Shown here one piece after another: positions 8,280 to 57,328 of a stretch of DNA of 64,000 nucleotides; positions within the stretch are counted from its first letter, which is position 1, and each line of letters starts with the position of its first letter. Made by a program: the position numbers and the translations under genes. Location: positions 372,001-436,000 of the IMG/VR virus record IMGVR_UViG_3300005613_000001, one strand, 5' to 3'. Under the pieces are notes generated by a model. The model saw nothing but the letters and a program-made list of their open reading frames with translations, had not been told where the DNA came from and ran no database searches.

Positions 8280-8495
8280 TTAACTACCCATCTTGCCTGC
8301 CAGCTTACCATCTGCTGTAGACGTAGTGGGGTTAAAATATTTGTGCGGATATTGAGCCCTTACGTAAGCGTCTGGATAATTCTTGCTGGCACCTGCTCGG
8401 TGAGTGTTCTCACTGGCATCTGCATCTTCACTACCCTGTACCTCTACGGGAAGCTCAATTTTATTCTCTTCTGCCCATTGCATAAATGTTTTCAT
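8280..8495 (-). CDS. small putative internal head protein (CTS-like MKTFMQWAEE)
   Basis: N-terminal motif; exact TATAAATA at 8530-8537 upstream. Confidence 0.65.
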   Translation of the reverse strand: MKTFMQWAEENKIELPVEVQGSEDADASENTHRAGASKNYPDAYVRAQYPHKYFNPTTSTADGKLAGKMGS

Positions 8496-8601
8496 ATTGA
8501 ACACCTTCTTTAGATTAACCTAGTATTCTTATTTATATAGGAGCGTGCAGTTTTTTTTTAATAGAGATTTGTTTTTCTCTAGAGGTATATATACTTGTAA
8601 A

Positions 8602-8697
8602 ATGGGATGTAACTGTGGAAAAAGGAAAAAACGGGTAAGAAAAATCAGAGTCTTAAAACGCCCTTTACCTCCCAAAAAAGTGATTAAATTATTATGA
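8602..8697 (+). CDS. 31-aa basic peptide MGCNCGKRKK...
   Basis: hand-translated; same start type as next ORF. Confidence 0.55.
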   Translation: MGCNCGKRKKRVRKIRVLKRPLPPKKVIKLL

Positions 8698-8707
8698 GGA
8701 GATAATT

Positions 8708-8962
8708 ATGGGATGTGGTTGTGGTGGATCATCAAGACGACCAACTCGCCGTCCGAGAGCGACTCAAAGATTCCAGGCAAAAAAGGTGGGTGGTGTAAGA
8801 CAAACTAATAATCCCAATGTCCCAAGACGACCCAAACAGGTTAAAGCGAAAACCAAAGCGTCTACGACACACCCCCAAAGTGAAACTAGCATCATGAAGC
8901 ATAGAGAAAAGATTAAGAAGCTTCGTGAAAAAGCTATTATGAATAAATTGGGGCGAAGGTAA
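8708..8962 (+). CDS. basic protein MGCGCGG...
   Basis: GAGGAG RBS; Arg/Lys-rich. Confidence 0.7.
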   Translation: MGCGCGGSSRRPTRRPRATQRFQAKKVGGVRQTNNPNVPRRPKQVKAKTKASTTHPQSETSIMKHREKIKKLREKAIMNKLGRR

Positions 8963-8963
8963 A

Positions 8964-10727: not shown

Positions 10728-11408
10728 ATGTTATCATTTAAAGACTGGAAAGAGAAGCAAAATATTATCAAGGAAAGCGCCCTAGCGGGTACGTTTAACC
10801 TTGGAGTAAAATCGCCTAATAGCATCGGCATAAGTGGTGCCAACACTGAGCCCGTTTCGGATATTGAATTTGAGCTAGAAGAAGCTAAGAAGAAATGTGC
10901 TGCCAAAAAGTGTAAAAAGATGGATGCTGAATTGGGTGACGAAGAAGACGCTGAGACTGCTCCCGATGGTGAAGTAGTTCCAAAGGAAAAAGCAGCACCC
11001 AAAGATTTAGATGCTGAAGAAGAAGGCGGCGAAGAGGAAGTGTCTGATGAAGATACTCCCGATGTCCCCGAAGAAGGCGATGAAGACGCCGAAGCGGAAG
11101 CCCCCGATGACGCCAAGAAGAAACTTCCTGTTCCTATGCTTCAAAAGAAGAAACAAAAGAAGCAGAAAAAGGAAATGAAGAAAGAGGAAACTGAATTATC
11201 CGATGACGATAAGGAATTCCTCGCAAGCCTCAAGAAAATGTATGATGCAGGAAATCCTAATCATAAATTTTCAAGTGGATTGAGCGAAGATGCACTGATG
11301 ACCCCGGTTGACCCCAACGCAGGATTGGCAGATATGGACCCGGAAGTAAGTTCTGATCCCAAACCGGGTGAAGTTGGCTTTGCACCGGATACCAAAATTG
11401 GTCAGTAA
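10728..11408 (+). CDS. acidic low-complexity putative prohead core/internal protein (MLSFKDWKE)
   Basis: CTS-like start; several I/L-x-E sites. Confidence 0.75.
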   Translation: MLSFKDWKEKQNIIKESALAGTFNLGVKSPNSIGISGANTEPVSDIEFELEEAKKKCAAKKCKKMDAELGDEEDAETAPDGEVVPKEKAAPKDLDAEEEGGEEEVSDEDTPDVPEEGDEDAEAEAPDDAKKKLPVPMLQKKKQKKQKKEMKKEETELSDDDKEFLASLKKMYDAGNPNHKFSSGLSEDALMTPVDPNAGLADMDPEVSSDPKPGEVGFAPDTKIGQ

Positions 11409-12317: not shown

Positions 12318-12467
12318 TTAGGTATAGACCCGACTTTGGGGAGCCCATTCCGGTCCCCCTATTCGCTTGGCCTTGGCGAGTTTATCTAATCTGTCACGTT
12401 TATCTTTCGGCTTTATCAATTCAGGTTTTTTAACCTCTTGAAGTTGAAGCCATTCCTTAAAGTTCAT
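12318..12467 (-). CDS. 49-aa peptide with CTS-like start MNFKEWLQLQE
   Basis: hand-translated; fills the gap between co-directional genes. Confidence 0.65.
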   Translation of the reverse strand: MNFKEWLQLQEVKKPELIKPKDKRDRLDKLAKAKRIGGPEWAPQSRVYT

Positions 12468-15016: not shown

Positions 15017-15322
15017 ATGGAAGGTTTCAGGGAATTTATAACCGAAAAAAAATCCACTCATTCTGAGGGGGATGTAGTATTTTTGTATCTTCAGAAGGCT
15101 AAGATTACCGAGATTGCCACGCAAACGGGCCGTTCTATTGGGGAAATCTATAGAATATTAAAACGAAATCACATATCCCCAAATAGGCTGAAAACAGGAC
15201 ATAATCACGTACTCTATTACCATGATGCTGGATTTGACACTTCCCAAATTGCTGGGTTTACCAATTACAGCGAGCGAAATGTCCGCTATATCCTAAGAAA
15301 TAAATTGACCGATGCCAACTAA
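15017..15322 (+). CDS. tandem-HTH protein with CTS-like start MEGFREFITE
   Basis: ITEIATQTGRSIGEIYRIL and TSQIAGFTNYSERNVRYIL. Confidence 0.7.
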   Translation: MEGFREFITEKKSTHSEGDVVFLYLQKAKITEIATQTGRSIGEIYRILKRNHISPNRLKTGHNHVLYYHDAGFDTSQIAGFTNYSERNVRYILRNKLTDAN

Positions 15323-16726: not shown

Positions 16727-17336
16727 AAATGTATGTCCTATAAGTGGTGAGAATTGCTACCTTCCTAAACCTCATCAAATAACGGAATTGGAAGATGGTA
16801 AGGTGGTAAAAGCATTCAAATTATGCAACAAATGTTTTTACGAATATGTTTCTGGGGATAAGAACTTCCCAAAGCCTAAACCAAAAGTAGAAATTGATCC
16901 TGAACAAGCAAATACGTTTGTTAAAAATTTAATGGACTTTGCGGAGACTATGATACAACAACAGGGAAGTCAATTCTCTATTCCTCAAAAAGCACCTTGC
17001 CCTAAATGCAATCAAACTATTGACAAAATAAATAAAACGGGCAAATTAGGGTGTCCTAATTGTTATGTGTGGTTTGATAAAGAATTGAAGCCTGTTCTTT
17101 ATTATTCACACAAGACACCCCATTCGCCCGAAGACATCATGCACACAGGCAAGAAGCCAAAGAAGTGGAAAAAATCTGCTAAACCACAACTGGAATCGCC
17201 TCAAATGAAATTGGTTAAGCTAAAATTCAAATTAGCCAAAGCTGTTCAAGCTGAAGACTACGAACAAGCTGCCAAGTTCAGAGATATGATCCGTGATTTA
17301 GAAGATGAAATCACTTCCTCTTCCTCTTCTTCTTAG
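16719..17336 (+). CDS. mcsA: McsA-like protein (CxxC motifs + UVR domain)
   Basis: CPKC..TGKLGCPNCY, HTGKKP, EDYEQAAKFRDMI. Confidence 0.85.
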   Translation: MNKNVCPISGENCYLPKPHQITELEDGKVVKAFKLCNKCFYEYVSGDKNFPKPKPKVEIDPEQANTFVKNLMDFAETMIQQQGSQFSIPQKAPCPKCNQTIDKINKTGKLGCPNCYVWFDKELKPVLYYSHKTPHSPEDIMHTGKKPKKWKKSAKPQLESPQMKLVKLKFKLAKAVQAEDYEQAAKFRDMIRDLEDEITSSSSSS

Positions 17337-18300
17337 ATTTAAGATACTCTTGAAAACTTCTAGGATCAATTATTCCAAAACCTTGGAAGAATTTTTTACC
17401 TGCATAGTCTTTATCTGAAATCGGAGTAGTATGCTTTCGGAGAACGCTCCTAATTGCACGAACCGTGTCCAATTTAGCTCCAGGTTTGTGTTTTTTAACG
17501 TATGACATAAGTAATGCTGTCACTCCGACCGCAAATGGACAAGCCATTGAAGTCCCTGACATCACACCATACCAATCATCGGGTATAGCACTTAAAATCT
17601 TTCCGCCTGGTGCCATAAAATCTAAATTCTGTCCTGTATTGCTAAAAGATGATCGTTTGAAATTCTCATCAATTGATCCAATTGCAATTGTCTCTGGATA
17701 ACGAGCAGGATAGAAAACATTTTTAGTTAATCCCGAGTTTCCAGCGGCACAAAAGACAGGAATTCCCTTCTTTGTAGCCAAACGAATTGCATTGTGTAAA
17801 TTTTGCACAGGAAATGGTGCGCCAAGCGACATAGAAATGATATCTACTTTGTTTCTAATTGCAAAGTAAATGCCCTTCGTCACCGCGTTTAAATCACCAC
17901 TTCCATTACGATCAAGAACTTTAACCGGCATAATTGTAGCTTGTGGTGCCACACCTATGATACCTAAATCATTTTTAGGGGCGGCAATAATACCGCAGCA
18001 ATGTGTGCCGTGAGCATTATCGTCAGCCGGTGGCTTGCTTGGATTTAGAATGTTTGCCCCACGTTTAACTACTAAATTAGCAGCAATATCAGGGTGGTCT
18101 AAATCACATCCCGTATCTAATACAGCTATAGTAACACCTTTGCCTTTTGTGTGTTCCCAAGCGTCGGGAAGATTGAAAGCAGTGATTTGCCATCCTGGGG
18201 CATCCCCTGCTTGTGCAATAGACATTGTTGTTTCAATTTTATAAGGAGGCAAAAAACAACGTCGCCTATTTTTCCTGTTCCTCTTCTGGTTGTACTTCAT
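17311..18300 (-). CDS. subtilisin-like S8 serine peptidase
   Basis: VLDTG, HGTHCCG, AAGN, SGTSMA. Confidence 0.95.
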   Translation of the reverse strand: MKYNQKRNRKNRRRCFLPPYKIETTMSIAQAGDAPGWQITAFNLPDAWEHTKGKGVTIAVLDTGCDLDHPDIAANLVVKRGANILNPSKPPADDNAHGTHCCGIIAAPKNDLGIIGVAPQATIMPVKVLDRNGSGDLNAVTKGIYFAIRNKVDIISMSLGAPFPVQNLHNAIRLATKKGIPVFCAAGNSGLTKNVFYPARYPETIAIGSIDENFKRSSFSNTGQNLDFMAPGGKILSAIPDDWYGVMSGTSMACPFAVGVTALLMSYVKKHKPGAKLDTVRAIRSVLRKHTTPISDKDYAGKKFFQGFGIIDPRSFQEYLKSKKKRKRK

Positions 18301-20335: not shown

Positions 20336-20337
20336 AA

Positions 20338-22320: not shown

Positions 22321-22322
22321 TT

Positions 22323-22619
22323 CTAAACCACGGGAGAAGGAACTTGAGCCCCGCCGCCCTGTACGATGCCCGAGCGCGAACGGGTAATCAAAGCCTTTAA
22401 CAATACCTTAAGTCCAGCATCAGGATCATTTGCATATTGTTGTTTTATTCGATCCACGTCGTCCCAGTTTGAAATGGTTGGATTGTCACTGGGTTGCCCT
22501 GTAGAGGTTGTAGCGCCTACATCTAGAGAGGAACGACCAATGGAACCATCGTGCGTCCAGCCAGGAGGCTGAATGGTCGTAAATTCCCTCATGGTTTTCC
22601 ACTCTTTAAATGTTTTCAC
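22323..22619 (-). CDS. putative internal head protein (MKTFKEWK)
   Basis: CTS-like start. Confidence 0.7.
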   Translation of the reverse strand: MKTFKEWKTMREFTTIQPPGWTHDGSIGRSSLDVGATTSTGQPSDNPTISNWDDVDRIKQQYANDPDAGLKVLLKALITRSRSGIVQGGGAQVPSPVV

Positions 22620-22957
22620 TCGCCTTCGCCACCTTCGCCTGCCATATTTTGTGCAATTCTATCTGCTCTGCTAAGCATATTGCCAAGAGCCGATGTACTC
22701 CAATTTCTTGAAGTAACTTCAGGTCTAACAGCAAAAATAGCTGCGTTAATTATTGCACTAAGCAGTTTATCAGGATCATCCCTATATTTGGGATTTGCAC
22801 TTAATCTTTTAGCTATATTTTGAATATATGAAATAACAGCCGGATCGGCCTCGCCTCTTTGACCCATTACTCGGTATAGATAACGCCAATCCATACTACC
22901 CTCGGGTGCTGCAATTTCAGATAATTCGTTTTCTTGCCATTCTTTATATGATTTCAT
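22616..22957 (-). CDS. putative internal head protein (MKSYKEWQENELSE)
   Basis: CTS-like start, AGGAG RBS. Confidence 0.75.
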   Translation of the reverse strand: MKSYKEWQENELSEIAAPEGSMDWRYLYRVMGQRGEADPAVISYIQNIAKRLSANPKYRDDPDKLLSAIINAAIFAVRPEVTSRNWSTSALGNMLSRADRIAQNMAGEGGEGE

Positions 22958-22965
22958 TTTTTCTC

Positions 22966-23352
22966 CTAAGGGGTGGGTTTCGTAGCATCAGGAAAAGTTA
23001 CTGGCCCCATCGCATCGTTACCATTGCCACCATCGGGCATCTGTGGAGGACCATCCCCTGTTGAAACTAAATTATTCTTACTTTGTGTATCTGCTTGTGA
23101 TACTTTGTCCAAATTCTCTTTTATCTTAGCAGGCCAATCTGATACTTGGTCTTCACGAACTCCTAATAGCTCAGAAAGCCCCTCCGCATTGTTGCAAAGC
23201 TTTGAAAAACTATCCCAAAAGTCTTTACCTACCTGCATACCAATGCGCACAACTTCCATAGCCTTAGAATCATCACCGCTATCTAAAAGAGGCGGTAATT
23301 TTTCTTCGCCATCGGCATCTACCTTTTCCCAAAGATCATAAAAATTTCCCAT
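22966..23352 (-). CDS. putative internal head protein (MGNFYDLWE)
   Basis: divergent CTS-like start. Confidence 0.65.
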   Translation of the reverse strand: MGNFYDLWEKVDADGEEKLPPLLDSGDDSKAMEVVRIGMQVGKDFWDSFSKLCNNAEGLSELLGVREDQVSDWPAKIKENLDKVSQADTQSKNNLVSTGDGPPQMPDGGNGNDAMGPVTFPDATKPTP

Positions 23353-23353
23353 A

Positions 23354-23668: not shown

Positions 23669-23696
23669 TATTGTCTCCTTTAGAAAATATTTAGTC

Positions 23697-23909
23697 CTAT
23701 CTTTTCATTTTACGTTTCATTTTACGCTTCATGAATCCCATCAAAGGCTTACATGATCCCTCCTTCGCACACGATTGATCCATTGGCTTAGGAGCGGCTC
23801 GCTGACTACGGTTACTTCTGCATTTGCTGGAAAATTGCGGATCTTCCCCATTGCTGTAAGAAGCCGACACTTCACCCGTATCTTCTAACCATTTTCTGAA
23901 ACTTAACAT
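23697..23909 (-). CDS. small protein (MLSFRKWLED) ending in MKRK repeats
   Basis: CTS-like start; near-perfect 12-bp tandem repeat at 3' end. Confidence 0.65.
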   Translation of the reverse strand: MLSFRKWLEDTGEVSASYSNGEDPQFSSKCRSNRSQRAAPKPMDQSCAKEGSCKPLMGFMKRKMKRKMKR

Positions 23910-26871: not shown

Positions 26872-27672
26872 ATGCAAAAGATTTTCTTCCTTGTATTAAT
26901 AATAATACCCTCTACGGTATTTAGTGATGAACCGGATAAAATACTACACGAAAAGTGTCTGTACCCAACCGTAATCATTGCTTCACATACGGAAGGTCGC
27001 ACCCGTGAGCGTGGAACAGGTGTTATTGTTAGAAGTGAAAAAATCGATGATTCTTATTTTAATGTCGTAGCAACCTGTCAGCATGTCTTAACCCACGCTG
27101 ATATGGCAATTAAACTTCCTATTTTTAAAGATTGGTCTAAATTTGAAAAGTGGGAAGTGTTTCCTTGTCTTAAATTCGCAGGACATAAAGATAGAGATTT
27201 AGGGATTGTTTTATTTGTAAGCTCAGAACCAATGCCCACTGCCGATTGGGGAATGGATGAGAAATTATTCATGGGCACAAGAATAATGAAAATTGCTTGC
27301 GGGAATGCAGAAGATCCCCGTTTAGATTGGGGATATATTAGCTCCCTCAATAATATAAAACATGAACACTCTGGGAAAATTAGAACATCAATTACAACTG
27401 TTCCCGGTGACTCCGGTGGACCAGTATTCTGCAACTATAAAATTATAGGGTTGGCTCAATCTATTAAAATGGTACAAGGCATGCCTGTGACCTGTATTTC
27501 TAATGCAATTCCAGCCCCTTTATTTAAAGAGTGGAATGAAGAAGAAAAGGGGCGGTTGGCGTTTGTATATGATCCCGAAAGCCCCTTGCCAATTTTAAGT
27601 TTTGCTATTGCAAAATTTGAATCTTATGAGATAAATAATAGCGTAATTCCTGAACACCATTGGGAGAATTGA
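26872..27672 (+). CDS. exported trypsin-like serine protease
   Basis: GTG, TCQH, DLG, GDSGGP. Confidence 0.9.
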   Translation: MQKIFFLVLIIIPSTVFSDEPDKILHEKCLYPTVIIASHTEGRTRERGTGVIVRSEKIDDSYFNVVATCQHVLTHADMAIKLPIFKDWSKFEKWEVFPCLKFAGHKDRDLGIVLFVSSEPMPTADWGMDEKLFMGTRIMKIACGNAEDPRLDWGYISSLNNIKHEHSGKIRTSITTVPGDSGGPVFCNYKIIGLAQSIKMVQGMPVTCISNAIPAPLFKEWNEEEKGRLAFVYDPESPLPILSFAIAKFESYEINNSVIPEHHWEN

Positions 27673-28253
27673 TGAAGACATTTAAAGAATATGCCGGAGA
27701 ACGCGATTTTATAGCTGAAGTGGCTCTAATTATGGCCGAAGAAAATATTGACCCAGTGGAGTTTATCGATAATTGCATCCAAGAATGCCAACCTCAATTA
27801 TTTAATGAGGCGGGCTTAATGAACAGAATGGGGAATTGGTTTCAAAAAGCTGGCGAATACGCCGCCCAAATCCCCAGTAGAGTCGGGAGTTACATAGATC
27901 AACAGTCAGCCATCGGTGGAATTGAAGTGGCTACTAATTTTAAAAATGCCTATCATTATTTAAATAATGCCAATGCAGTTTTGGAAAAGTATCGCAAACA
28001 AAATCCTGCCGGAGACGCAGAATTAATTCAAGGGGTAAATGAATTGGCACAATTCGTCCAAGCTGCGATGCAAAAATTGTATAATATGAAAAAGAAAGCA
28101 GATCGGGTTGAAGGCAGAATTAAAGCTCACACTATGCAAAATAGGCAGAGCCCCGATTGGGCACCGCCCCCAGGAAGTCAACAGGCTCCGGCCCCAGCAC
28201 CAGCCAACCCGGCACCAACTCCTGCTGCTATTCCGGTTCCTGGTGGACCCTAA
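27672..28253 (+). CDS. putative internal head protein (MKTFKEYAGE)
   Basis: CTS-like start; LFNE-AG cleavage-like site; Pro/Ala tail. Confidence 0.75.
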   Translation: MKTFKEYAGERDFIAEVALIMAEENIDPVEFIDNCIQECQPQLFNEAGLMNRMGNWFQKAGEYAAQIPSRVGSYIDQQSAIGGIEVATNFKNAYHYLNNANAVLEKYRKQNPAGDAELIQGVNELAQFVQAAMQKLYNMKKKADRVEGRIKAHTMQNRQSPDWAPPPGSQQAPAPAPANPAPTPAAIPVPGGP

Positions 28254-28572: not shown

Positions 28573-29097
28573 ATGGATTTCAAAGAGTGGATTATAGAAG
28601 AGTCATCTCTAAATGACCTATATCAAAGTGCGGTAGATGCGTTCCCCAACTGTCGTAAGCGTCAGCATTCCATTGATGAAATCACAATTACAAGATTAGA
28701 GTGGGTGCCTTATCGTGGAATGAGAACCCTTTTTATAAAAGGGCTAGCTCAAAATACCTCAAATGGGCACGAATATTCTCCGGTTGTTGTCTTTAAAGGA
28801 GTTCAGTACCACAATGAAGGCGAAGGAAATCTTGTAGAAATTATTGATAATAATGGGGTTCGCCATTTCTTCGAAAAGCTGTCAAATCAAGACACTCAAA
28901 TTCTCACAAAATGTACGTGCAAGGACTATGAATGGAGATTTAGGCATAAAAACTTTGAAGATCACTCACATCAGGGAAGAGATAGAACACCTTATGTTGC
29001 ATTGTTTAACCCTGGCATAGCTGATATTGCCCCTGGTTTGTGCAAACACATTATGAAATTAGCTCATGTTTTGTCGGAATCTGGAATTACTGGTTGA
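28573..29097 (+). CDS. SWIM Zn-finger protein with CTS-like start (MDFKEWIIEE)
   Basis: CTCKDY...CKH. Confidence 0.8.
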   Translation: MDFKEWIIEESSLNDLYQSAVDAFPNCRKRQHSIDEITITRLEWVPYRGMRTLFIKGLAQNTSNGHEYSPVVVFKGVQYHNEGEGNLVEIIDNNGVRHFFEKLSNQDTQILTKCTCKDYEWRFRHKNFEDHSHQGRDRTPYVALFNPGIADIAPGLCKHIMKLAHVLSESGITG

Positions 29098-30164: not shown

Positions 30165-30199
30165 GTTTCGACCCACACGGTCAGATAAATTCTGCCATG
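30165..30199 (-). CRISPR. solitary degenerate repeat overlapping the cas3 stop
   Basis: hairpin CATGG-CAGA/TCTG-A-CCGTG followed by TGGGTCGAAAC (repeat handle is TGGGTTGAAAC). Confidence 0.55.
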
Positions 30200-47474: not shown

Positions 47475-48137
47475 ATGGGTGATCCGAGAAGAGGTAGAAA
47501 ATATTTAACGCCAGCAGGCCAGCTTGTTGTCTTTCTGTATGCCAAGCGATTGGCCGCTGCCTGGGATGACCCCTATCAAGAAGAAGATGTAGTAGTTAAG
47601 CATATCGGCAAAGGGTACTCAGGCGAGCTTGAAGATATTCCTTTTCATTACTTGAAGCCTGTCCGTAAACGACGCCGACCCCAAGCACTTCCTTCTGATC
47701 GCGGGGGTTATTCATGTCCGCATTGCAGGACTTCATTTCCTAATTATCGCGGCCCCGAAGTAGAATGCCCTGGCTGTGGAAGTATTGGGGAATCTTTTAA
47801 AGAGTGGCTACTTAATGAAATGGCAATGATTTCATTACCTCGCCCCTTGGCTACTGAAGATGGGGTTATTGATGCAATTGATTTAAGATTAGAAGATTAC
47901 CCTAAGAATACAGAAAAAGAGAAAACAAAGTTATCATTGCTTATGTTTAGAAGTCCATTTTGCGGCAAATTTCCCGGCTCTAGTAAATATTTCGTATTTG
48001 ATGGTGAGGATTACACAATTGATATGCAACCACATCCTGATTACATACAATTGCCGGAAGATTGGTGGGAATTCGCCGTAGCTTATAGAAAAAACAAGGT
48101 TGTCAAGCGGCCAAGGAAGGCCCGCATTTATGATTGA
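47475..48137 (+). CDS. hypothetical protein with Zn ribbon and internal CTS-like motif
   Basis: CPHC..CPGC followed by ESFKEWLLNE. Confidence 0.7.
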   Translation: MGDPRRGRKYLTPAGQLVVFLYAKRLAAAWDDPYQEEDVVVKHIGKGYSGELEDIPFHYLKPVRKRRRPQALPSDRGGYSCPHCRTSFPNYRGPEVECPGCGSIGESFKEWLLNEMAMISLPRPLATEDGVIDAIDLRLEDYPKNTEKEKTKLSLLMFRSPFCGKFPGSSKYFVFDGEDYTIDMQPHPDYIQLPEDWWEFAVAYRKNKVVKRPRKARIYD

Positions 48138-48439
48138 GGTCCGAATATATGAGCCGGATCATCAAGTGCGTCAGGCGATTTGCCTTGAAACTGCATGAAT
48201 TTTATTTCTAATTGTCTAATTCTCTCCTTCACGGCATTTAACATCTTGTGAAGGTTTGAAGAGTCGGTCATTGCTCTTTGTACTCCTACTTCAAGCCTTC
48301 TAATAGCATAAGGCTCCTCAGGAGTTGATTTAACAGGAGGCGCAGTAGGAACTTTCATCCCAGCAGCCGGTGTTTGGCTTGGTAATTCTTCTGTGGGGCT
48401 GTCCCCTACGTTCTCTATAAAATCTCTAAAAGCACCCAT
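48128..48439 (-). CDS. putative internal head protein (MGAFRDFIE)
   Basis: CTS-like start. Confidence 0.7.
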   Translation of the reverse strand: MGAFRDFIENVGDSPTEELPSQTPAAGMKVPTAPPVKSTPEEPYAIRRLEVGVQRAMTDSSNLHKMLNAVKERIRQLEIKFMQFQGKSPDALDDPAHIFGPQS

Positions 48440-50273: not shown

Positions 50274-51590
50274 TCAGTTACAAACAATAATACAAGAATA
50301 CCAAACACCATTTGATCCTTTTGCCATATCTGCGCCAAAGTAACGATGTTGTTTTGAAGCAACAGACCAATGACCTGGCGATTCTTTCCAACATTTAAAC
50401 ATTTCCCACCCTAAATCAAACATTGAATCATTTTCTTGTCGTTTCCATGATTCGGCACAAATCTCTGCTGTCTCTCTCCCTAAACCAGCATTCATAATCT
50501 CTTGAGAGCGTTTGTTGAAATTTTGATGTCCTTGTGTCCGAACTCTTGCTTGATATTCTGCGTGTTTTGTAGCTAATTCCATCAATAGTGGATGGGGTTC
50601 TGATTTACAAACATTAGCCCCCGGAAATTGCAGCCCCGCCTCTATAAGACCTTCTGATGTGTTGTGCAAGTCGGGCTTTGCATTATTTTCAAATGCTATT
50701 GGGGCCTCTTTCATAAAATATAACGCCGCCTCATAAGTTCTATTAAACTCATCTTTGATTTCATTATCTGAGGGGGGTCTTTGATGTGTGCCGAATTCAA
50801 TAATAATTCCAAATGCACCTTGTCTATCTGCCCAATTGGCATCTAGAGTTGGCCCAGCAGATCCACCTCTAGTTCTATAGCCTGACAAGTCGCCCATTTT
50901 CCCGCATATTCTTTTGTAGGCGTCTTTATTTGAAGGATATATAAATACCCTTCCATAAGAGTGCCCTGAGGCAAAGGCATCAAATTCCTGTTTTTTAAAG
51001 AAATCTCTTAAATTTTGAATAGGCGTTACTGACTTTTTGTTGTCATAAAAATTCCTATTGGGATCAACCCCGTCTACGCTTCTACTATTGGGGTAACTAT
51101 CGGGGGATATAACTGGAATAAACCACAGTTCTCTTGTATCTACAAGTTCTGTAATTTTTGCATCTTTCCCATAATTATCTAGAATAGTTCCAATCCACCC
51201 CAATACAGTGCAGGTAGAAATAGGCTCATTACCATGAATACAACCCGACATCAAAACTTTGGGTTTGTCACCTGTTTTCATCTCATTGGTAATGCGAATA
51301 TAAACTTGATCCTTATTTTTAGTTGTTTTCCCATAGGTTCCAATCTCAACTAAATCTTCCGCTTCTTTTTCCCACGCTTTTAATTGCTCCACTAATTGTG
51401 GATACTCCATAAAAGATGGGATAACAACCGAAATGTTGGGTTGTTGCGGCTCTTGAGGTTGAGTCAGTTCGGAAACTGCTCCCTCAAATTTCTTAAAGAG
51501 TTCTTCTACTGGTCTTTCTGTTGACGTGGAGTAGAAGAAGAGTGTAGATAGCACAAACAGTGCTATAAATAGAATAACCTTCTTGTCCAT
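50274..51590 (-). CDS. exported M14 zinc carboxypeptidase fused to CAP-like domain
   Basis: IHGNE, DPNRN, HSYG, IEFG; C-terminal H..F..R, EICAES, W..SPGH. Confidence 0.88.
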   Translation of the reverse strand: MDKKVILFIALFVLSTLFFYSTSTERPVEELFKKFEGAVSELTQPQEPQQPNISVVIPSFMEYPQLVEQLKAWEKEAEDLVEIGTYGKTTKNKDQVYIRITNEMKTGDKPKVLMSGCIHGNEPISTCTVLGWIGTILDNYGKDAKITELVDTRELWFIPVISPDSYPNSRSVDGVDPNRNFYDNKKSVTPIQNLRDFFKKQEFDAFASGHSYGRVFIYPSNKDAYKRICGKMGDLSGYRTRGGSAGPTLDANWADRQGAFGIIIEFGTHQRPPSDNEIKDEFNRTYEAALYFMKEAPIAFENNAKPDLHNTSEGLIEAGLQFPGANVCKSEPHPLLMELATKHAEYQARVRTQGHQNFNKRSQEIMNAGLGRETAEICAESWKRQENDSMFDLGWEMFKCWKESPGHWSVASKQHRYFGADMAKGSNGVWYSCIIVCN

Positions 51591-51702: not shown

Positions 51703-53178
51703 TTAGATCACGAAGTTTGCAATTGACAGACGGGCGTAGAACTTACTTCCTTCACGGAGCAACTTCTTACCGTAACGTGTCAAGATACCCTTCCTCGGGC
51801 AGAAGCTCTCGGGGTCCAACACAACCGGAGTTTGTGTCAGGGGCACGTATGGAAGGTAGAAGTAACCAGCGTCCATGTAGCTGTCACCCTTGTAACCCAT
51901 AAGGATCTGGCCTTGTGGGAACAGAGGATCTTTGTACAGACGCCAACGGCTATTCACCGTACCAACGTACTGGATACCTAGAGAACTTGTGAAAGTCTCG
52001 GAAGGTGCAGGAGCGAAACCAGCGGTAGCTGTTTCAAAGATAGAAGCAACTTCAGGAGAAGTAACAAGCCAGTTACATCCACCACGAAGAGTCTTTCTAT
52101 GAACAACGTTACTGACTTCTACGATCTTCACGTAGAGGCTTTCATAACGCTCTTTAATTGTGTCACCCAAAGCGGTATTGAAGTCCCAAGAAGCAACCGT
52201 ACCAGCGTTGTTACGAAGGTCAGTAAGAACTTCTCGGTCAATTTCCAAGTTAATTTCTTGGGCCAAAACGGCTGTCAATTCAGCTTCAGCGTCAAGGTTG
52301 TGCTGGCTACGAAGGTCTTGTTGAGCTTCATAGGACCAAACAGCCTTAAGCTTTCTTGTCTTGGCAGCGACTTCTTCGCTTTCCACGACTAAATTAATTT
52401 CGGGCAGATCAGGGTTGCATTCCATGTTATATTCATAGTTTGCGACAACAGAGTTGTCCCCAGGCCCGGCTCCCCCGCCACCAGTGTCAGACCACGCAAT
52501 TACTAGCTCACCTGTGGTGAGGTCTAGCGAACTACCGGCTGCTAGTGGGGTATAATCAGGAGCACCAATAGCATTAACGGTGAAAGTACCACTCTCATCG
52601 ATGGCATACGTAGCAACTGCTGTAGCACCATCATAAATCGTACCTGTCATCGTTCCTGCCAAAATTGGCGTGTGTTCAAGCGGAGCGAAAACACTTGTCA
52701 TATCTAAACCATCATCAGTGGAACTCGTCTCATTCTGGACGAACTGGTGAGAGTAGTAGATATCAAGGTTTGCATCACCACTTGCCAACTGTTGAAGTGA
52801 ATTCACATCGTCAGTTGGGTAGCCGCCATTATTATCAGCACCACGGGTTGCGCCCTTGTTGCTGCTGTAACGGAAGCGTAGGTAATAAACCAAACCAGTT
52901 GGGCCAAGCAATGGTTGTACGGATACAATCTTGTTAGCAATTAACTGGGGATAAATACGACGTACAAGCGGAATAGAAATACGCTTGAACTGGGCAATGT
53001 CGCCCGTGTCGGTTGAAGTCTCGTTGAAAAGCATTTGGTTTTCAAGCATAACGGCAGTGTTCTTGCGAATGAATTCATCATCCAGGTCGCCATCTACACT
53101 CTCAAGAAGACCAGTCTTTTCCCACTTGGCTTCACAAACTTTACTTTCATTCAAAAGTTTTGAATTACCACTAAACAT
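51703..53178 (-). CDS. T4-like major capsid protein gp23
   Basis: LENQ, LVRR..P.L.A..IVSVQP..GPTG, AKTRKLKA.W..E..QDL, EINLEIDRE, PYVPL, TRYG. Confidence 0.97.
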   Translation of the reverse strand: MFSGNSKLLNESKVCEAKWEKTGLLESVDGDLDDEFIRKNTAVMLENQMLFNETSTDTGDIAQFKRISIPLVRRIYPQLIANKIVSVQPLLGPTGLVYYLRFRYSSNKGATRGADNNGGYPTDDVNSLQQLASGDANLDIYYSHQFVQNETSSTDDGLDMTSVFAPLEHTPILAGTMTGTIYDGATAVATYAIDESGTFTVNAIGAPDYTPLAAGSSLDLTTGELVIAWSDTGGGGAGPGDNSVVANYEYNMECNPDLPEINLVVESEEVAAKTRKLKAVWSYEAQQDLRSQHNLDAEAELTAVLAQEINLEIDREVLTDLRNNAGTVASWDFNTALGDTIKERYESLYVKIVEVSNVVHRKTLRGGCNWLVTSPEVASIFETATAGFAPAPSETFTSSLGIQYVGTVNSRWRLYKDPLFPQGQILMGYKGDSYMDAGYFYLPYVPLTQTPVVLDPESFCPRKGILTRYGKKLLREGSKFYARLSIANFVI

Positions 53179-53195: not shown

Positions 53196-54131
53196 TTATT
53201 TAACACCTGCAAGCTTTTTGATGGCGGCAAGGTCACCAAAACTCTCGCTCAGTGTGTCAGTTTCCTCTTGTTTGCTTTCTTTAACTACTTCCGGTTCGTC
53301 AAACTCAGCAATCAATTTTTCGTCTGTTACGACTTGTCCTCTCCCCGTTGCGCTCTCTGCTTTTTCAACTCTTTCATTCTGTTCTGAGATAACCTCTTTT
53401 TCCTTATCGGATTCTTTGGCTTCTCTATATTCTTTCAAGACCTGTGCGGCCTCGTTTAATTGTTCTTGCATCTTTGTGTTATCAGTAGAGATGCGGATAT
53501 TACGCCCCTCCATGATCTTCACTTGTGCCTTCAGCTTATCAAGCTCTTGGCGAGCTTCGTCCAGCTTAGAGCTAGTAGCAAGTTGTGCTTCTTCTTCTGA
53601 GAGATAGTCGGAAGTGAGTTCAACAATCTTGTCAAGGACAACTTTATGCTCAGCCATACGTGGGTCATTAATAATGTCACGTTTAGCTTGTTCATAAATT
53701 TCTTTACCCTTGTGCTGTAGGAATGCATCAACCTTATCAACGATATATTCTTTCATATCATTGAGTTTGGAATCATACTCTTCCAACATTGTTGTCTCGA
53801 TATCAGTATTCTTGCCCTTCTCTTCTTCAATCATCTTGTAGGCTTCTTCATACTGCTCTTCGAGCATCTTTTCAAACTCTTCTTTAAGAGCTTCTTTCCT
53901 CATCTCTTGGTCCTTAATAATGGCAACGGCTTCTTGATAGCCTTCGTAGGCAACTCGTTCCGCTTCCTCAAGCTCGGAAGAGAGATTTTTGTAGGCTTCT
54001 TCGAGATTTGCCTCATACTCGCCTTCGAGTTCCTTTTTGGCCTCTTCTACCATTTCTTGGACAACAGAAGCTACTTCATTAGTTTGCTCTTCTGGTAATA
54101 ACTGTTTTAGTGCTTCTAATAGCTTATCCAT
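53196..54131 (-). CDS. prohead core scaffold protein (gp22-like)
   Basis: acidic coiled coil between protease and MCP; KKLAGV tail. Confidence 0.85.
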   Translation of the reverse strand: MDKLLEALKQLLPEEQTNEVASVVQEMVEEAKKELEGEYEANLEEAYKNLSSELEEAERVAYEGYQEAVAIIKDQEMRKEALKEEFEKMLEEQYEEAYKMIEEEKGKNTDIETTMLEEYDSKLNDMKEYIVDKVDAFLQHKGKEIYEQAKRDIINDPRMAEHKVVLDKIVELTSDYLSEEEAQLATSSKLDEARQELDKLKAQVKIMEGRNIRISTDNTKMQEQLNEAAQVLKEYREAKESDKEKEVISEQNERVEKAESATGRGQVVTDEKLIAEFDEPEVVKESKQEETDTLSESFGDLAAIKKLAGVK

Positions 54132-54855
54132 CGATTAACCTCGCTTTAAATTCGGAAGTCTGTCTGTGTACAAGACCGCTCAATATAACAACTAAAGCAT
54201 CTTTGTTGTTCTTATTATGTATGCTCGTAGCTTCATTTTTGGGCGGACTATTTTGTGGCGTAATAACTTCACGTTGATTATTAGCCACTCGTTGTTGGAA
54301 CGCAGCATAGGTAGAAGGATCAGCTACAGCGTCGAAAGTAATCAACTTATAGCTTTCGCCTATAATAAAAATACCTTCTTCGTTTACCTTTCCGTTACCA
54401 ACTCCACGGGATGATATTCCCACGCGGATATCATCATCAATTAAACTCTTCAAAACTTTACCACAGGGAGTATTAAGAATTTGACCCTCTCCCATCAAAG
54501 TGTTATTATCCCACCAAAGCTTGGTTACAACGTGAGAAGCTTCTTTAAAATGGATAATACTGTCCGTTGGGTGGTCAAGTTCCCCTAACAATCCCCTGTT
54601 GTTTACAGTTTCTTCAAGTCTTTTTAAGTTCGTGTCAAGGACATTATATGGATACATCCTTTTATTTTTGTTAACTGCCTCTGCTTCTTGGAATTTGCCT
54701 TTGAAAGTCATCAAAGACTTCTTCCCAACAGAAGCCGATTCATTCAATTCACACTCATTTAGCAAGAAACCAACATTTTCAACAAGAAGTCTATCGCTAT
54801 ACTCCTTGCCAGGAGTCGGATCATGCTCTACTAACAATAGAGGGTCCATATACAC
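54124..54855 (-). CDS. prohead protease gp21
   Basis: N.N.R.Y, LGELDHP, SH, TP.G, GISSRG.G, D.VADPS. Confidence 0.95.
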   Translation of the reverse strand: MYMDPLLLVEHDPTPGKEYSDRLLVENVGFLLNECELNESASVGKKSLMTFKGKFQEAEAVNKNKRMYPYNVLDTNLKRLEETVNNRGLLGELDHPTDSIIHFKEASHVVTKLWWDNNTLMGEGQILNTPCGKVLKSLIDDDIRVGISSRGVGNGKVNEEGIFIIGESYKLITFDAVADPSTYAAFQQRVANNQREVITPQNSPPKNEATSIHNKNNKDALVVILSGLVHRQTSEFKARLIDG

Positions 54856-54865
54856 TCCTTAAATG

Positions 54866-56698
54866 TTATTGGTCAATTACTAAATCTTGCTCTTTACCCT
54901 TGTTCATCTTATAAGACTGAGGCGTTTCAGCCTTCGGAACGTAAGGATTCTGCAAGCTGGGCCATGTGTCGGAACCTTGATCTTGACCTAAGCCGCCTTC
55001 ATGGTTCTTATCAACGCCGGGCTCACCCTTCATCGTATAATCACCAAATGGTTTCGGCACATACGGGTTCTGTAGGGAAGGATACGTCTCCGAATCGCCT
55101 ACATTGCCGTAACTGCTATTTCTCATCTTACTAGCCAAACCGCCCTTATAATTCTTTCCATCACTAACGGGAGCTACATCGCCCCAATCACCGGAGAAAT
55201 CATTTTTAGGACTGTAAGGTACGCCAGCGTTCTGAGCCATCCTGGGATGGTCACCACTTGTGGTGATATGAACTTTATTACTTGGATTCCACTCGCTCGT
55301 ATCGAGATTGGTTTCCATTAAATATTGCACCCATTCGGCTACTGTTTCAGCCAAATCAACATCGGGTTCAATTTCACCTTCTACAACAGCGTGTAAGTCA
55401 CGCAAGAATTCCTGAGCCTCTTCGGCCAGAATCTCATCACCATCTTTATTGGCCTGTGAATAAATTTCACCGACGACGGTGTAGAGATCATAGAAAACTT
55501 GCATTTCTACGCCAGCAGATTCGTCCAGTTCAGGATAGAACTGAGTTACAGCCTCTTGGAAGCATTCATATTCTTGACAATCAGTTTGATTGGCAAGCCT
55601 AAGAATTTTATCAATACTTTCAGTATGGATTTCGTGGGCTGTTCTTAAAATTCCCTCTGCCATAAAATCGCAAATTTGGTCATCATAAGCAGAAACCCCT
55701 GCGGTTTCTAATGCTTCTTGAACAACCTTTGCGAGTTCAGATTGTGTCAGATAGACAACATTGGGCCATTGGGTAATAATGCCTTCCAAAGATTCTTGCA
55801 AAGCATCTGAATCATCAAAAGCATTATGTCGTTTTAATTCTGCTACGGCCTTGCAGAAATCTGTGTTTTCAGCCAACCTCTTGCTACCGTCACGTAAGCA
55901 CTTGACTTCGTGATTGAGCGTTTTCCAGTTAAAACTGAGAATTTTACCTTCATTGCGGACATTAATGGTAGGAATGCGAAGGGCAACTACATTACCCTTT
56001 TCATCGTGCTTGGCAACAGATTCTTTTAATGCCGGTCCCAAAGCTCTAAAATCAACATATTCTAATACGTTTTGAGCAGTGGTATTAATTTGATTAACAA
56101 CTTCGGTAGCCATTTTCAGGCCAACCTTATGTCGTCTACGTTCCGCAGCCTGTCTCTCACGTCGCTTTTGAGCCGGACCCTTTAGGCGTGCAGCCTTTTT
56201 TCGTCCTCGCAACATGGCAGCTTTACGTGCCCCAGAATAATGCTTTCTAGGCTTTTTCACTAGCTTCTTCTTAACGCCATGCTTGGTCTCAACAGCCCTA
56301 TAACGTGCATCTTCCATTTGTCTCTTAACAACTGGCAAGCCTACGTAATCGTCAAAAATTTCATGGGCCTTCGTTTCATTGCCGTCTATTAATTCTTCAA
56401 CAAGACTACGAAGGGTTCCTCGGGCATTTTGTCGTTCCTGTTCCTCGTCAACCACCAACTCCTCAATACCCTCTAAGGTGATTGCATCCTTATCCAGCGT
56501 ATAGGACGCATAAATGTAGGTATCACTTAATGTTTCATAAAGAACGTGTGAATCGCCATAACAATGCAACGAAACGGCTTCTTGTTGTAATGCTTGGGCT
56601 AACACATCCTCTGCACCAACTAACTCTCGTTCGGCATTGGATAGTGATTCACTCTCGATCTTTCTAAATACATCAAAGTCAATTAGTTTTCGCTTCAT
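54866..56698 (-). CDS. large prohead-core-like protein
   Basis: between portal and protease; duplicated PSLQNPYVPK near C-terminus; AGGAG RBS. Confidence 0.75.
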   Translation of the reverse strand: MKRKLIDFDVFRKIESESLSNAERELVGAEDVLAQALQQEAVSLHCYGDSHVLYETLSDTYIYASYTLDKDAITLEGIEELVVDEEQERQNARGTLRSLVEELIDGNETKAHEIFDDYVGLPVVKRQMEDARYRAVETKHGVKKKLVKKPRKHYSGARKAAMLRGRKKAARLKGPAQKRRERQAAERRRHKVGLKMATEVVNQINTTAQNVLEYVDFRALGPALKESVAKHDEKGNVVALRIPTINVRNEGKILSFNWKTLNHEVKCLRDGSKRLAENTDFCKAVAELKRHNAFDDSDALQESLEGIITQWPNVVYLTQSELAKVVQEALETAGVSAYDDQICDFMAEGILRTAHEIHTESIDKILRLANQTDCQEYECFQEAVTQFYPELDESAGVEMQVFYDLYTVVGEIYSQANKDGDEILAEEAQEFLRDLHAVVEGEIEPDVDLAETVAEWVQYLMETNLDTSEWNPSNKVHITTSGDHPRMAQNAGVPYSPKNDFSGDWGDVAPVSDGKNYKGGLASKMRNSSYGNVGDSETYPSLQNPYVPKPFGDYTMKGEPGVDKNHEGGLGQDQGSDTWPSLQNPYVPKAETPQSYKMNKGKEQDLVIDQ

Positions 56699-56860
56699 AT
56701 TATGACTCCTTAAGCCGATGTACATGATAATTAACTCGTATGGTCTATATATGGAAGTAGCGGAGTTTTCTATTAACCTTTTGAGGTAAAATTACAACCA
56801 CTACTCATAAATAGCTACTAGTATTATTGTATGCAGCAACGCACAAAAAAGGGTTCATAA

Positions 56861-57328
56861 ATGATAACTTTCAAAGATTACGTTCAAAATAAGCAGTTAA
56901 TGGAATTTGATGCCTCTACTGATTTTATGGGAGGCGCAACAGATCCAGGTGGCCCTCTTGGTGGTGATTCCCCTCAAAAAGTACCCAGCAGTGACTCTGG
57001 AAAATGGAAATTCTCTAGAGGCGACGGTAGTAATAGCAGCGAACAAGCAGATAAAGCCCTAGCACAATTAAATAACCTAGTCCGAATGGTTATTGAACAC
57101 TCGCCCCCAACAGTATTAAGTTTTTTAACAAGAGTTAAGGGGCAAATGAATGACACTTTTAATCAGCAATTGCAAGACATGCAAAATTCCGGCGCATGGG
57201 CACAAATACAAGGCATGAGAAAGCCTAGAATAGCCAATAACCATCCATCTGATGATGGCTTGGAAACAATCGCCCCCAATGATGCTGACTCAGGTGGAGG
57301 CGCAGGTGGAGAAGAAGGTGGAGAATAA
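56861..57328 (+). CDS. putative internal head protein (MITFKDYVQNKQLME)
   Basis: CTS-like start; ATAAATA upstream. Confidence 0.7.
   Translation: MITFKDYVQNKQLMEFDASTDFMGGATDPGGPLGGDSPQKVPSSDSGKWKFSRGDGSNSSEQADKALAQLNNLVRMVIEHSPPTVLSFLTRVKGQMNDTFNQQLQDMQNSGAWAQIQGMRKPRIANNHPSDDGLETIAPNDADSGGGAGGEEGGE

What the first reader, a model, noticed from the sequence alone, without database searches (positions are those of the whole stretch)
8280..57328. Large family of unrelated proteins with T4-type capsid-targeting N-termini
Seen: MKTFMQWAEE (8495), MLSFKDWKE (10728), MNFKEWLQLQE (12467), MEGFREFITE (15017), MKTFKEWK (22619), MKSYKEWQE (22957), MGNFYDLWE (23352), MLSFRKWLE (23909), MKTFKEYAGE (27672), MDFKEWIIEE (28573), MGAFRDFIE (48439), MITFKDYVQ (56861), plus MALKTWDDWKKE at 155. 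Established: T4 internal proteins carry a ~10-aa targeting sequence (MKTYQEFIAE type) that gp21 removes after Glu. Inference: a large set of packaged, co-injected proteins. The cargo includes a tandem-HTH protein and a SWIM Zn-finger protein, candidates for takeover or anti-defence effectors.
Basis: partly seen in the sequence, partly recalled or inferred. Interest (0 to 1): 0.7.

Follow-up and report, generated by a model that had tools for sequence, protein, structure and literature searches.

The report
T4-type capsid-targeting tags, expanded tenfold
A 527-kb uncultivated T4-like huge phage puts the same ten-residue N-terminal tag that phage T4 uses to load proteins into its head on about 37 unrelated proteins, so its injected protein cargo can probably be read from the sequence, though packaging itself is untested.

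Summary
All 13 N-termini exist, though one starts at GTG, one has an ambiguous start and one is only a weak match.

- **Specificity.** Genome-wide, a position matrix finds 36 strong copies among 14,997 possible start codons. 35 of them sit on independently called gene starts.
- **Not paralogy or DNA repeats.** The protein bodies share no similarity, and the codons encoding the motif vary.
- **Match to T4.** The consensus is M-(K)-T-F-K/R-E-W/F/Y-L-E-E. Its information peaks at residues 4 and 7, the T4 IPIII targeting determinants, followed by L/I at 8 and a Glu. T4 ipI starts MKTFKEF.
- **Machinery.** The window encodes a gp21-type prohead protease, a gp23-type capsid protein and a portal. The genome has a gp55-type late sigma factor.
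- **Expression.** Tagged genes are about 7-fold enriched in units headed by a T4-late-like TA(T/A)ATA element.
- **Modularity.** NUDIX and SWIM-like cargo have untagged homologues.
- **Distribution.** The expansion is specific to this clade: 36 and 22 copies in two relatives, against 0-3 in five other T4-like phages.

The best reading is functional capsid-targeting sequences. This is a known mechanism on a new scale, with enzyme cargo. Packaging, cleavage and injection remain inferred.

The parts
8280..8495 (-). Tagged gene, 71 aa, MKTFMQWAEE; orphan
   Evidence: PSSM 12.8 at a called start. No Pfam or PHROG hit. The orthologue in LR756511 keeps the identical tag.
10728..11408 (+). Tagged gene, 226 aa, MLSFKDWKE; acidic, low-complexity body
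   Evidence: PSSM 12.8. No family hit. Sequence shown.
12318..12467 (-). Tagged gene, 49 aa, MNFKEWLQLQE
   Evidence: PSSM 15.2.
15017..15322 (+). Candidate tagged gene, 101 aa, MEGFREFITE, HTH protein. It is identical to T4 IPII/III MKTYQEFIAE at residues 1, 6, 7, 8 and 10.
   Evidence: HTH_23 at 24.7 bits against a cut-off of 24.6, plus PHROG DNA-binding hits. First ATG after a divergent intergenic region; PSSM only 3.8.
22323..22619 (-). Tagged gene, 98 aa, GTG start, (M)KTFKEWK; last of a run of four tagged genes
   Evidence: Read directly from the sequence; the GTG overlaps the upstream stop. PSSM 6.0.
22616..22957 (-). Tagged gene, 113 aa, MKSYKEWQE
   Evidence: PSSM 11.5.
22966..23352 (-). 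Tagged gene, 128 aa, MGNFYDLWE
   Evidence: PSSM 10.8. The orthologue in LR756511 starts MTFLEAWE.
23697..23909 (-). Tagged gene, 70 aa, MLSFRKWLE; heads the run, with a TATATATA element 7 nt before the ATG
27672..28253 (+). Tagged gene, 193 aa, MKTFKEYAGE; its start overlaps the stop of a trypsin-like peptidase gene
   Evidence: PSSM 11.6.
28573..29097 (+). Tagged gene, 174 aa, MDFKEWIIEE; SWIM-like viral family
   Evidence: PSSM 14.8. CxC...CxH pattern present. Atlas viral clusters, some carrying PF04434. About 26 of 38 homologues lack the tag.
48128..48439 (-). Tagged gene, 103 aa, MGAFRDFIE; 3.3 kb downstream of the capsid gene
   Evidence: PSSM 10.8. No orthologue in 80 related loci.
56861..57328 (+). 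Tagged gene, 155 aa, MITFKDYVQ; lies between the portal gene and the 610-aa head-module gene
   Evidence: PSSM 12.0. One orthologue at 81% identity keeps the tag.
1..155 (-). Start of a 169-aa gene (genome 371646-372155), MALKTWDDWKKE; weak variant, membership doubtful
   Evidence: PSSM -2.4.
54124..54849 (-). gp21-type prohead protease; presumed to remove the tags
   Evidence: Peptidase_S77 E 5e-27. T4 gp21 structure 5JBL E 1.8e-16.
53196..54131 (-). Glu/Lys-rich coiled-coil protein in the position of T4 gp22; presumed scaffold and tag receptor
   Evidence: Position and composition only. Conserved in 58 related loci. No similarity to T4 gp22.
51703..53178 (-). gp23-type major capsid protein with an N-terminal propeptide of about 46-53 aa
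   Evidence: PF07068 E 1.7e-83. 29% identity to T4 gp23 from residue 58. Conserved LNE, LLE and L-x-N-E sites.
57339..59912 (-). Portal protein
   Evidence: phrog_213 E 1.4e-77.
54866..56698 (-). Conserved 610-aa protein of unknown function between portal and protease, the position of T4 gp67/gp68
   Evidence: No family hit. Homologues in 64 related-locus ORFs.

Best explanation
The N-termini are functional T4-type capsid-targeting sequences.

1. About 37 unrelated proteins are made late in infection.
2. Their first ~10 residues form an amphipathic tag: aromatic at 4 and 7, Leu/Ile at 8, Glu at 9-12.
3. The tag docks them into the scaffolding core of the assembling prohead.
4. The gp21-type protease then cuts after the Glu, freeing the mature proteins inside the head.
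5. They leave with the DNA at the next infection.

Shown here:
- the motif, its restriction to true N-termini and its statistical excess;
- the unrelated bodies;
- the match to the T4 determinants;
- the presence of protease, capsid protein, portal and late sigma factor;
- the link to late-type promoter elements;
- the modularity of the tag;
- the restriction of the expansion to one clade.

Inferred: docking, cleavage, packaging, ejection, and any role of the cargo in the host.
For: - **N-terminal exclusivity.** 35 of 36 high-scoring sites among 14,997 candidate starts are called gene starts. Enrichment over internal Met has p 1e-13.
- **Unrelated cargo, protein-level constraint.** No blastp match among the 37 bodies at E<1e-3. 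Arg is encoded by six codons and Leu by five at the conserved positions.
- **Match to T4.** Translated from NC_000866, ipI is MKTFKEF..., ipII and ipIII are MKTYQEFIAE, and gene 61.1 is MKTFKEFIKE. A 6-column matrix built only from this phage ranks 61.1 and ipI first and second of 3086 T4 start candidates.
- **Determinant positions.** A review of Mullaney & Black 1996 places targeting at residues 4 and 7 and processing at 8 and 10 (PMC9026906). Here information peaks at residue 4 (F in 34/37, 3.9 bits) and residue 7 (W/F/Y in 36/37, 3.7 bits). Residue 8 is L or I in 23/37. A hydrophobic-(x)-Glu motif follows in 29/37, against 133/795 other proteins.
- **Machinery.** Peptidase_S77 protease, gp23-type capsid protein, portal and a gp55 homologue. 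The capsid propeptide has conserved L-x-(N)-E sites like those that end many tags.
- **Expression.** TA[TA]ATA lies 4-7 nt before the ATG at 61 genes, including the large terminase. 22/37 tagged genes lie in units headed by it, against 139/793 others (OR 6.9, p 4e-8).
- **Modularity.** The three nearest NUDIX homologues are tagged and 13 more distant ones are not. About 12 of 38 SWIM-like homologues are tagged; the rest start directly at the conserved domain.
- **Conservation.** About 10 orthologue pairs at 31-63% identity keep the tag. There are 22 copies in LR756511 and 27 in 929 kb of related IMG/VR loci.
Against: - There are no protein-level data, so nothing shows that any of these proteins is in a virion or is cleaved.
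- The presumed receptor, the gp22-like scaffold, has no detectable similarity to T4 gp22. Conservation of the binding site is therefore assumed.
- Five other T4-like phages lying between T4 and this clade lack the motif. The likeness to T4 could be convergence or patchy retention.
- 11-15 tagged genes have no recognisable late element of their own or upstream in their unit. The late status of TA[TA]ATA is itself inferred.
- T4's best match, gene 61.1, is not a known head protein.
- 8 of the 37 lack a hydrophobic-(x)-Glu motif in the expected place.
- The complex prediction gave no answer.
Confidence: 0.6

Rival explanations
1. The tag is a genuine protein-level docking peptide, but for a destination other than the prohead. 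Candidates are a phage or host hub protein, a chaperone or a degradation adaptor. On this reading the likeness to the T4 CTS is convergent, both being short amphipathic helices.
For: - The motif is absent from five intermediate T4-like phages.
- The scaffold is not recognisably gp22.
- T4's best match is gene 61.1, which lies in the primase region and is not a known head protein.
- Several cargo are enzymes of kinds that T4 does not package: NUDIX, P-loop kinase, GNAT and a nucleotidyltransferase.
Against: - The match to T4 covers the four functionally mapped positions and strict placement at residue 1.
- In T4 the 10 residues alone suffice to package foreign proteins.
- The tag is linked to late-type promoters and sits next to the head module.
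- The Glu motif that ends the tags resembles the conserved sites in the capsid propeptide.
Confidence: 0.2
2. The shared N-terminus reflects a constraint on the 5' coding sequence for translation initiation, for instance on leaderless late mRNAs, and is not a protein signal.
For: - Tagged genes are enriched for a promoter element placed 4-7 nt before the ATG, which implies leaderless or near-leaderless mRNAs.
- The second codon is often AAA or AAT.
Against: - 50 other genes with the same element lack the motif.
- 15 tagged genes have only a Shine-Dalgarno leader.
- Conservation is at the amino-acid level. Lys and Arg interchange across unrelated codon families, five Leu codons are used, and TGG, TTY and TAY interchange at residue 7.
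- Orthologues keep the residues while the DNA changes.
Confidence: 0.05
3. The motif is a relic of shared ancestry or of a recombination cassette (promoter plus first codons copied between genes) and has no present function, or it is a chance pattern.
For: - In T-even phages the conserved CTS-coding DNA has been proposed to help swap internal-protein genes. This rests on my own knowledge and was not tested here.
- Several tagged genes lie in tandem runs.
Against: - The bodies share no similarity.
- The upstream DNA differs between members and the codons differ.
- The excess over shuffles and over internal Met is large.
- The tag persists in orthologues at 31-63% identity and across a clade sampled from many environments.
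Confidence: 0.03

Closest known systems
Phage T4 internal proteins IPI, IPII and IPIII and their capsid-targeting sequence (Mullaney & Black 1996; reviewed in PMC9026906 and PMC3012670)
   Same: - A ~10-residue tag starting at Met1.
- Aromatic residues at 4 and 7, Leu/Ile at 8, then a Glu.
- Identical first seven residues in some members: T4 ipI MKTFKEF against MKTFKEY/W here.
- Otherwise unrelated cargo.
- The phage has gp21-, gp23- and gp55-type genes.
   Different: - About 37 tagged genes (4.4% of 830 called genes) against 3-4 in T4.
- Phe and Trp are preferred over Tyr and Phe.
- There are two registers, M-x-x-F and M-x-F.
- The Glu is often at residue 9 or in an L-N-E motif.
- Cargo includes recognisable enzymes and proteins up to 947 aa, and is not notably basic (median pI 6.6).
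- The scaffold is not recognisably gp22.
- Nothing has been verified at the protein level.
T4 Alt, gp67 and gp68 (other gp21-processed head proteins)
   Same: Packaged proteins whose propeptides are removed after Glu by gp21. Alt is an enzyme delivered with the DNA.
   Different: Their N-termini (MELITELFDE, MEGLIEAIK, MLLIPETHE) do not match this motif. No homologues of them were sought or seen here.
Ejection and inner-body proteins of phiKZ, 201phi2-1 and SPN3US (giant phages; PMC5694885, PMC7411985, PMC10052503)
   Same: Giant phages that package many different proteins. A gp21-related prohead protease trims them after Glu.
   Different: Their cleavage motif is S/A-X-E in longer propeptides, and no shared N-terminal decapeptide has been reported. 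They have a different capsid lineage and biology. Here one short, uniform tag marks the cargo.
Phage P1 Dar proteins and encapsulin cargo-loading peptides
   Same: Short terminal peptides that direct otherwise unrelated proteins into a capsid-like shell.
   Different: The sequences, termini and shells differ. This is an analogy only and was not tested here.

Membership tests
T4-type capsid-targeting sequence / internal proteins | The tag sits at the extreme N-terminus, starting at Met1 | tested here: met
   35 of 36 high-scoring sites in a six-frame scan of 14,997 start candidates are called gene starts. Matches to T4 proteins always align residue 1 to residue 1.
T4-type capsid-targeting sequence / internal proteins | Aromatic residues at positions 4 and 7, the targeting determinants of IPIII | tested here: met
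   F in 34/37 at position 4 and W/F/Y in 36/37 at position 7. These are the two most informative columns. The determinants are taken from PMC9026906.
T4-type capsid-targeting sequence / internal proteins | Hydrophobic residue at 8 and Glu near 10, forming an L/I-x-E site for gp21 | tested here: met
   L or I at position 8 in 23/37. A hydrophobic-(x)-E motif within positions 7-12 in 29/37, against 133/795 other proteins. Eight members lack it.
T4-type capsid-targeting sequence / internal proteins | The phage encodes a gp21-type prohead protease | tested here: met
   PF03420 E 5e-27, above the cut-off. PDB 5JBL E 1.8e-16.
T4-type capsid-targeting sequence / internal proteins | gp22-type scaffolding core to which the tag binds | tested here: inconclusive
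   A Glu/Lys-rich 311-aa protein occupies the gp22 position and is conserved in the clade. Neither phmmer-type nor jackhmmer searches link it to T4 gp22.
T4-type capsid-targeting sequence / internal proteins | Expression together with head genes (late) | tested here: inconclusive
   Promoter-like TA[TA]ATA elements are enriched (OR 6.9-7.8). They also precede the large terminase. A gp55 homologue is present. No transcript data exist: no sequencing run holding this genome was listed.
T4-type capsid-targeting sequence / internal proteins | Protein present in the virion with the tag removed after Glu | not testable with these tools
   This needs virion mass spectrometry. The phage is known only from a metagenome.
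T4-type capsid-targeting sequence / internal proteins | The tag alone suffices to package a foreign protein | not testable with these tools
   This needs a fusion experiment. The structure-based proxy (scaffold + protease + 71-aa cargo) returned 'no answer'.
SWIM zinc finger (cargo 28573-29097) | CxCxnCxH signature and a match to PF04434 | tested here: inconclusive
   The signature is present in the sequence. There is no Pfam hit at E<0.01. The nearest Atlas viral clusters carry PF04434 in 12-23% of members.
Helix-turn-helix DNA-binding protein (cargo 15017-15322) | A match to an HTH family above the curated cut-off | tested here: met
   HTH_23 at 24.7 bits against a cut-off of 24.6. PHROG DNA-binding families match both halves. 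This is marginal, and the gene start is ambiguous.

The most novel reading that the evidence does not exclude
One clade of huge T4-like phages from sediments and waters uses a single ten-residue tag to load some 40-50 different proteins per genome into the head. The cargo would include a NUDIX hydrolase, a P-loop kinase, a GNAT acetyltransferase, a CCA/poly(A)-type nucleotidyltransferase and DNA-binding proteins. If so, the whole injected effector set of an uncultivated phage can be listed from its sequence. The deep conservation of the tag between T4 and this clade, despite an unrecognisable scaffold, would point to a conserved receptor that has not yet been identified.
Probability: 0.45. Interest if true: 0.75.

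Novelty: new member of a known kind. Interest (0 to 1): 0.58.

Why it matters
Proteins that travel inside the phage head act before any phage gene is expressed, so they are prime candidates for first-strike counter-defence and takeover. In T4 there are only a handful, and one of them (IPI) blocks a restriction system.

If the tag works here as in T4, it gives a sequence-only way to list the injected proteome of huge phages that cannot be grown. It would also supply dozens of unknown proteins and several enzymes as candidates for such roles. Tagged and untagged versions of the same enzyme family would show how phages recruit proteins as cargo. Finally, it offers natural tag variants for T4-based protein-packaging work.

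Tried and rejected
- **Complex prediction.** Scaffold-like protein plus protease plus a 71-aa tagged protein, with clade alignments, returned 'no answer' at score 0.00. It counts neither for nor against. I rebuilt the alignment without it.
- **T4 queries against the genome.** Single-sequence searches with T4 gp55 and gp22 found nothing. An iterated search among seven T4-like genomes then found gp55, but not gp22 or gp33.
- **Sequencing runs.** None was listed for a 6-kb stretch. For the capsid gene, only runs holding relatives were listed, with at most 0.13 of the words, from marine, sediment and peat samples. I therefore laid no reads and have no transcript evidence.
- **Degenerate DNA patterns.** As a cross-genome probe they caught under half of the known members and scored at control level in other phages. 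I replaced them with protein-level scans of fetched genomes.
- **Cargo hypervariability.** I expected the cargo to be more variable than the rest of the genome. It is not: 14/37 have a match in LR756511, against 215/793 other proteins (p 0.19).
- **Basic cargo.** I expected T4-like basic internal proteins. The median pI is 6.6, against 5.9 for the other proteins.
- **Function of the cargo.** Pfam and PHROG found nothing for most of it. The Atlas found nothing for the 947-aa member.
- **T4 coverage.** T4 bases 150,001-168,903 were not scanned.


Full report
**What the window is.** The window is bases 372,001-436,000 of a single 527,112-bp virus record (IMG/VR). It is rated complete, has 41% G+C and uses the standard genetic code. 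It carries a T4-type head module:
- a gp23-type major capsid protein at 51703-53178(-) (PF07068, E 1.7e-83; 29% identity to T4 gp23);
- a gp21-type prohead protease at 54124-54849(-) (Peptidase_S77, E 5e-27; T4 gp21 structure 5JBL, E 1.8e-16);
- a portal at 57339-59912(-);
- a Glu/Lys-rich coiled-coil protein in the gp22 position at 53196-54131(-).

The nearest GenBank record is the unannotated 595-kb uncultured phage LR756511, with 74.5% capsid-protein identity. All cultured T4-like phages are at about 30%.

**The observation.** Every listed N-terminus exists, with three caveats:
- MKTFKEWK at 22619 starts at GTG.
- MEGFREFITE at 15017 is the first ATG after a divergent intergenic region, but lies inside a longer open frame.
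- MALKTWDDWKKE at 155 is a weak variant on a gene that leaves the window.

I called 830 genes in the genome with a simple codon-score, RBS and start-codon scheme that knows nothing of the motif. A loose regex for the motif matches 32 of the 830 N-termini but only 12 of 3172 internal Met (p 1e-13). Column-shuffled N-termini give 3.7.

A 10-column matrix built from these N-termini was then run over all 14,997 ATG/GTG/TTG codons followed by at least 35 codons, in six frames. 36 score above 9, and 35 of those are my called gene starts. With the GTG gene this makes 37 members, or 4.4% of the called genes, plus about five borderline cases. They lie all over the genome, from base 623 to 513,395. The window holds about a third of them.

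**Not paralogy and not a DNA repeat.** With the first 15 residues removed, no two of the 37 proteins match at E<1e-3. Upstream DNA differs between members. At the conserved positions Arg is written with six codons, Leu with five, and Phe with both of its codons. The constraint therefore acts on the peptide.

**Comparison with T4.** I translated the T4 genes from NC_000866:
- ipI begins MKTFKEFTST.
- ipII and ipIII begin MKTYQEFIAE.
- The uncharacterised gene 61.1 begins MKTFKEFIKE.

Members here begin MKTFKEY, (M)KTFKEW, MKTFREW and MKTFRQF. A 6-column core of my matrix, built from this phage alone, ranks 61.1 and ipI first and second among 3086 start candidates in the first 150 kb of T4. Similarity to the T4 proteins never extends past about residue 9 and always aligns residue 1 with residue 1.

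The review PMC9026906, reporting Mullaney & Black 1996, states three things:
- The first 10 residues of IPIII suffice for packaging.
- Targeting depends mainly on residues 4 and 7.
- Processing depends on residues 8 and 10.

In this family, information content peaks at exactly residues 4 (Phe in 34/37, 3.9 bits) and 7 (Trp/Phe/Tyr in 36/37, 3.7 bits). Residue 8 is Leu or Ile in 23/37. A hydrophobic-(x)-Glu motif follows within residues 7-12 in 29/37, against 17% of other proteins. The matrix selection makes the height of these peaks partly circular. Their positions were not chosen by me.

**Protease sites.** Across 53 capsid proteins of the clade, the N-terminal propeptide has three conserved sites: L-N-E, L-L-E and L-x-N-E. 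The last lies five residues before the point where homology to mature T4 gp23 begins. Many tags end in the same way, for example WLNE-S, LLNE-N and YDLNE-G. This fits one protease specificity serving both the capsid protein and the cargo, but it remains an inference.

**Expression.**
- The hexamer TA[TA]ATA is strongly over-represented just upstream of genes, with a sharp peak 4-7 nt before the ATG at 61 genes. This implies leaderless or nearly leaderless transcripts.
- The element resembles the T4 late promoter TATAAATA. That resemblance rests on my own knowledge.
- It precedes the large terminase and a baseplate-like protein.
- An iterated search finds a gp55-type late sigma factor at genome 352456-353085.
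- In the first count, which used the 32 regex-matched N-termini, 11 of 32 tagged genes carry the element against 50 of 798 others (OR 7.8, p 5e-6).
- Counting short co-directional units over the full set of 37, 22 of 37 tagged genes lie behind it against 139 of 793 others (OR 6.9, p 4e-8).
- Fifteen tagged genes have only a Shine-Dalgarno leader, so the motif is not tied to one mode of initiation.

**Modularity.** The tagged NUDIX hydrolase has its Pfam domain starting at residue 13. Its three nearest database homologues (46-60% identity) begin MKFKNWF, MNFKNWF and MNFREY, whereas 13 more distant ones have unrelated N-termini. The SWIM-like cargo at 28573-29097 belongs to a widespread viral family. 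Of its 38 homologues, about 12 carry an M-x-F-x-x-W-L extension and about 26 start directly at the conserved ESSL...LYQSAV segment. The tag is thus an add-on that a protein family can have or lack.

**Distribution.** Scores above 9 with the same matrix:

| Genome | Size | Sites scoring above 9 |
|---|---|---|
| This phage | 527 kb | 36 |
| LR756511 | 595 kb | 22 |
| LR756508 (another huge T4-like phage) | 484 kb | 3 |
| Flavobacterium phage immuto | 160 kb | 0 |
| Cyanophage S-SSM4 | 183 kb | 1 |
| Aeromonas phage Ah1 | 221 kb | 0 |
| T4 (first 150 kb) | 150 kb | 1 |

- Eighty IMG/VR loci with capsid proteins 64-98% identical hold 27 further tagged ORFs in 929 kb. Most lie 1-9 kb downstream of the capsid gene, and their bodies differ between loci.
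- Fourteen of the 37 cargo proteins have a homologue in LR756511, and about ten of these pairs (31-63% identity) keep the tag.
- Cargo is not more variable than the rest of this very divergent genome pair.

The expansion is therefore a property of one clade. The absence of the motif from intermediate T4-like phages leaves open whether the likeness to T4 is retained ancestry or convergence.

**Cargo.** Most members are orphans of 49-226 aa. The recognisable ones are:
- a PolyA_pol/CCA-type nucleotidyltransferase (539 aa);
- a NUDIX hydrolase;
- an AAA_33 P-loop kinase;
- a GNAT acetyltransferase;
- a SAM methyltransferase with a weak tag;
- an HTH protein;
- the SWIM-like protein.

A role in counter-defence or takeover is plausible by analogy with T4 IPI and Alt, but nothing here tests it.

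**Verdict.** The pattern is real, specific and conserved. It matches the one experimentally defined phage capsid-targeting signal at the positions that matter, in a phage that has the matching protease and capsid lineage. I put 0.6 on functional capsid targeting with proteolytic removal. I put 0.2 on a docking tag with another destination, and little on translational or historical explanations.

No paper in the searchable library links capsid-targeting sequences with jumbo or huge phages. The same review does suggest that T4-like phages use the CTS to package varied proteins. This is therefore a new and much larger instance of a known mechanism, not a new one.

Noticed in passing
window 30181-37154 (array at 32399-33600): A phage-borne CRISPR-Cas locus. 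About 18 direct repeats of ~36 nt, spaced 61-75 nt apart, lie between a Cas3-like helicase gene (30181-32388) and a Cas7 gene (33753-34643). Unassigned 602-aa and 235-aa genes follow, possibly Cas8 and Cas5.
   Followed up: partly
genome-wide; in the window e.g. upstream of 23909, 49704, 64144(-); gp55 homologue at G000:C1:352456-353085: 61 genes have TA[TA]ATA just 4-7 nt before the ATG, which implies leaderless late transcripts. The large terminase and several large structural-looking genes are among them. A gp55-type late sigma factor is present.
   Followed up: partly
window 50274-51590, 17311-18336, 26872-27672, 44798-45682: An unusual load of peptidases. An M14 zinc carboxypeptidase with a signal-like N-terminus lies directly downstream of the capsid gene. 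There is also a subtilase and two trypsin-like peptidases, one of which has a signal-like N-terminus and a late-type element.
   Followed up: no
window 4123-5652: A complete sensor histidine kinase (CHASE3, HisKA, HATPase_c) encoded by the phage.
   Followed up: no
L045, L048, L049, L050 (genome 268702-270867, 210470-211684, 197479-198432, 126294-127133): A second recurrent N-terminal pattern. Several late-element genes begin with short Cys/Gly-rich stretches (for example ...NNCGPQ......NECGQWG......GSGCGST...) and have no PHROG match.
   Followed up: no
L003 (genome 289880-290362) and L004 (genome 120883-121092): Two extra partial matches to the gp23 capsid family lie away from the head module. 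One sits in a 325-aa open frame. The other is interrupted by two stop codons.
   Followed up: no
L006:18966-19130 (T4 gene 61.1): The best match to this motif in T4 is not an internal protein. It is the uncharacterised 54-aa product of gene 61.1, MKTFKEFIKED..., which is annotated only as hypothetical.
   Followed up: partly
window 19670-23909: Four tagged genes form one co-directional run with an untagged 104-aa gene, a 660-aa family-2 glycosyltransferase and a 221-aa gene. A COOH-NH2 ligase, an NAD-dependent epimerase, a Dam methylase and an N4/N6 methylase lie nearby.
   Followed up: no
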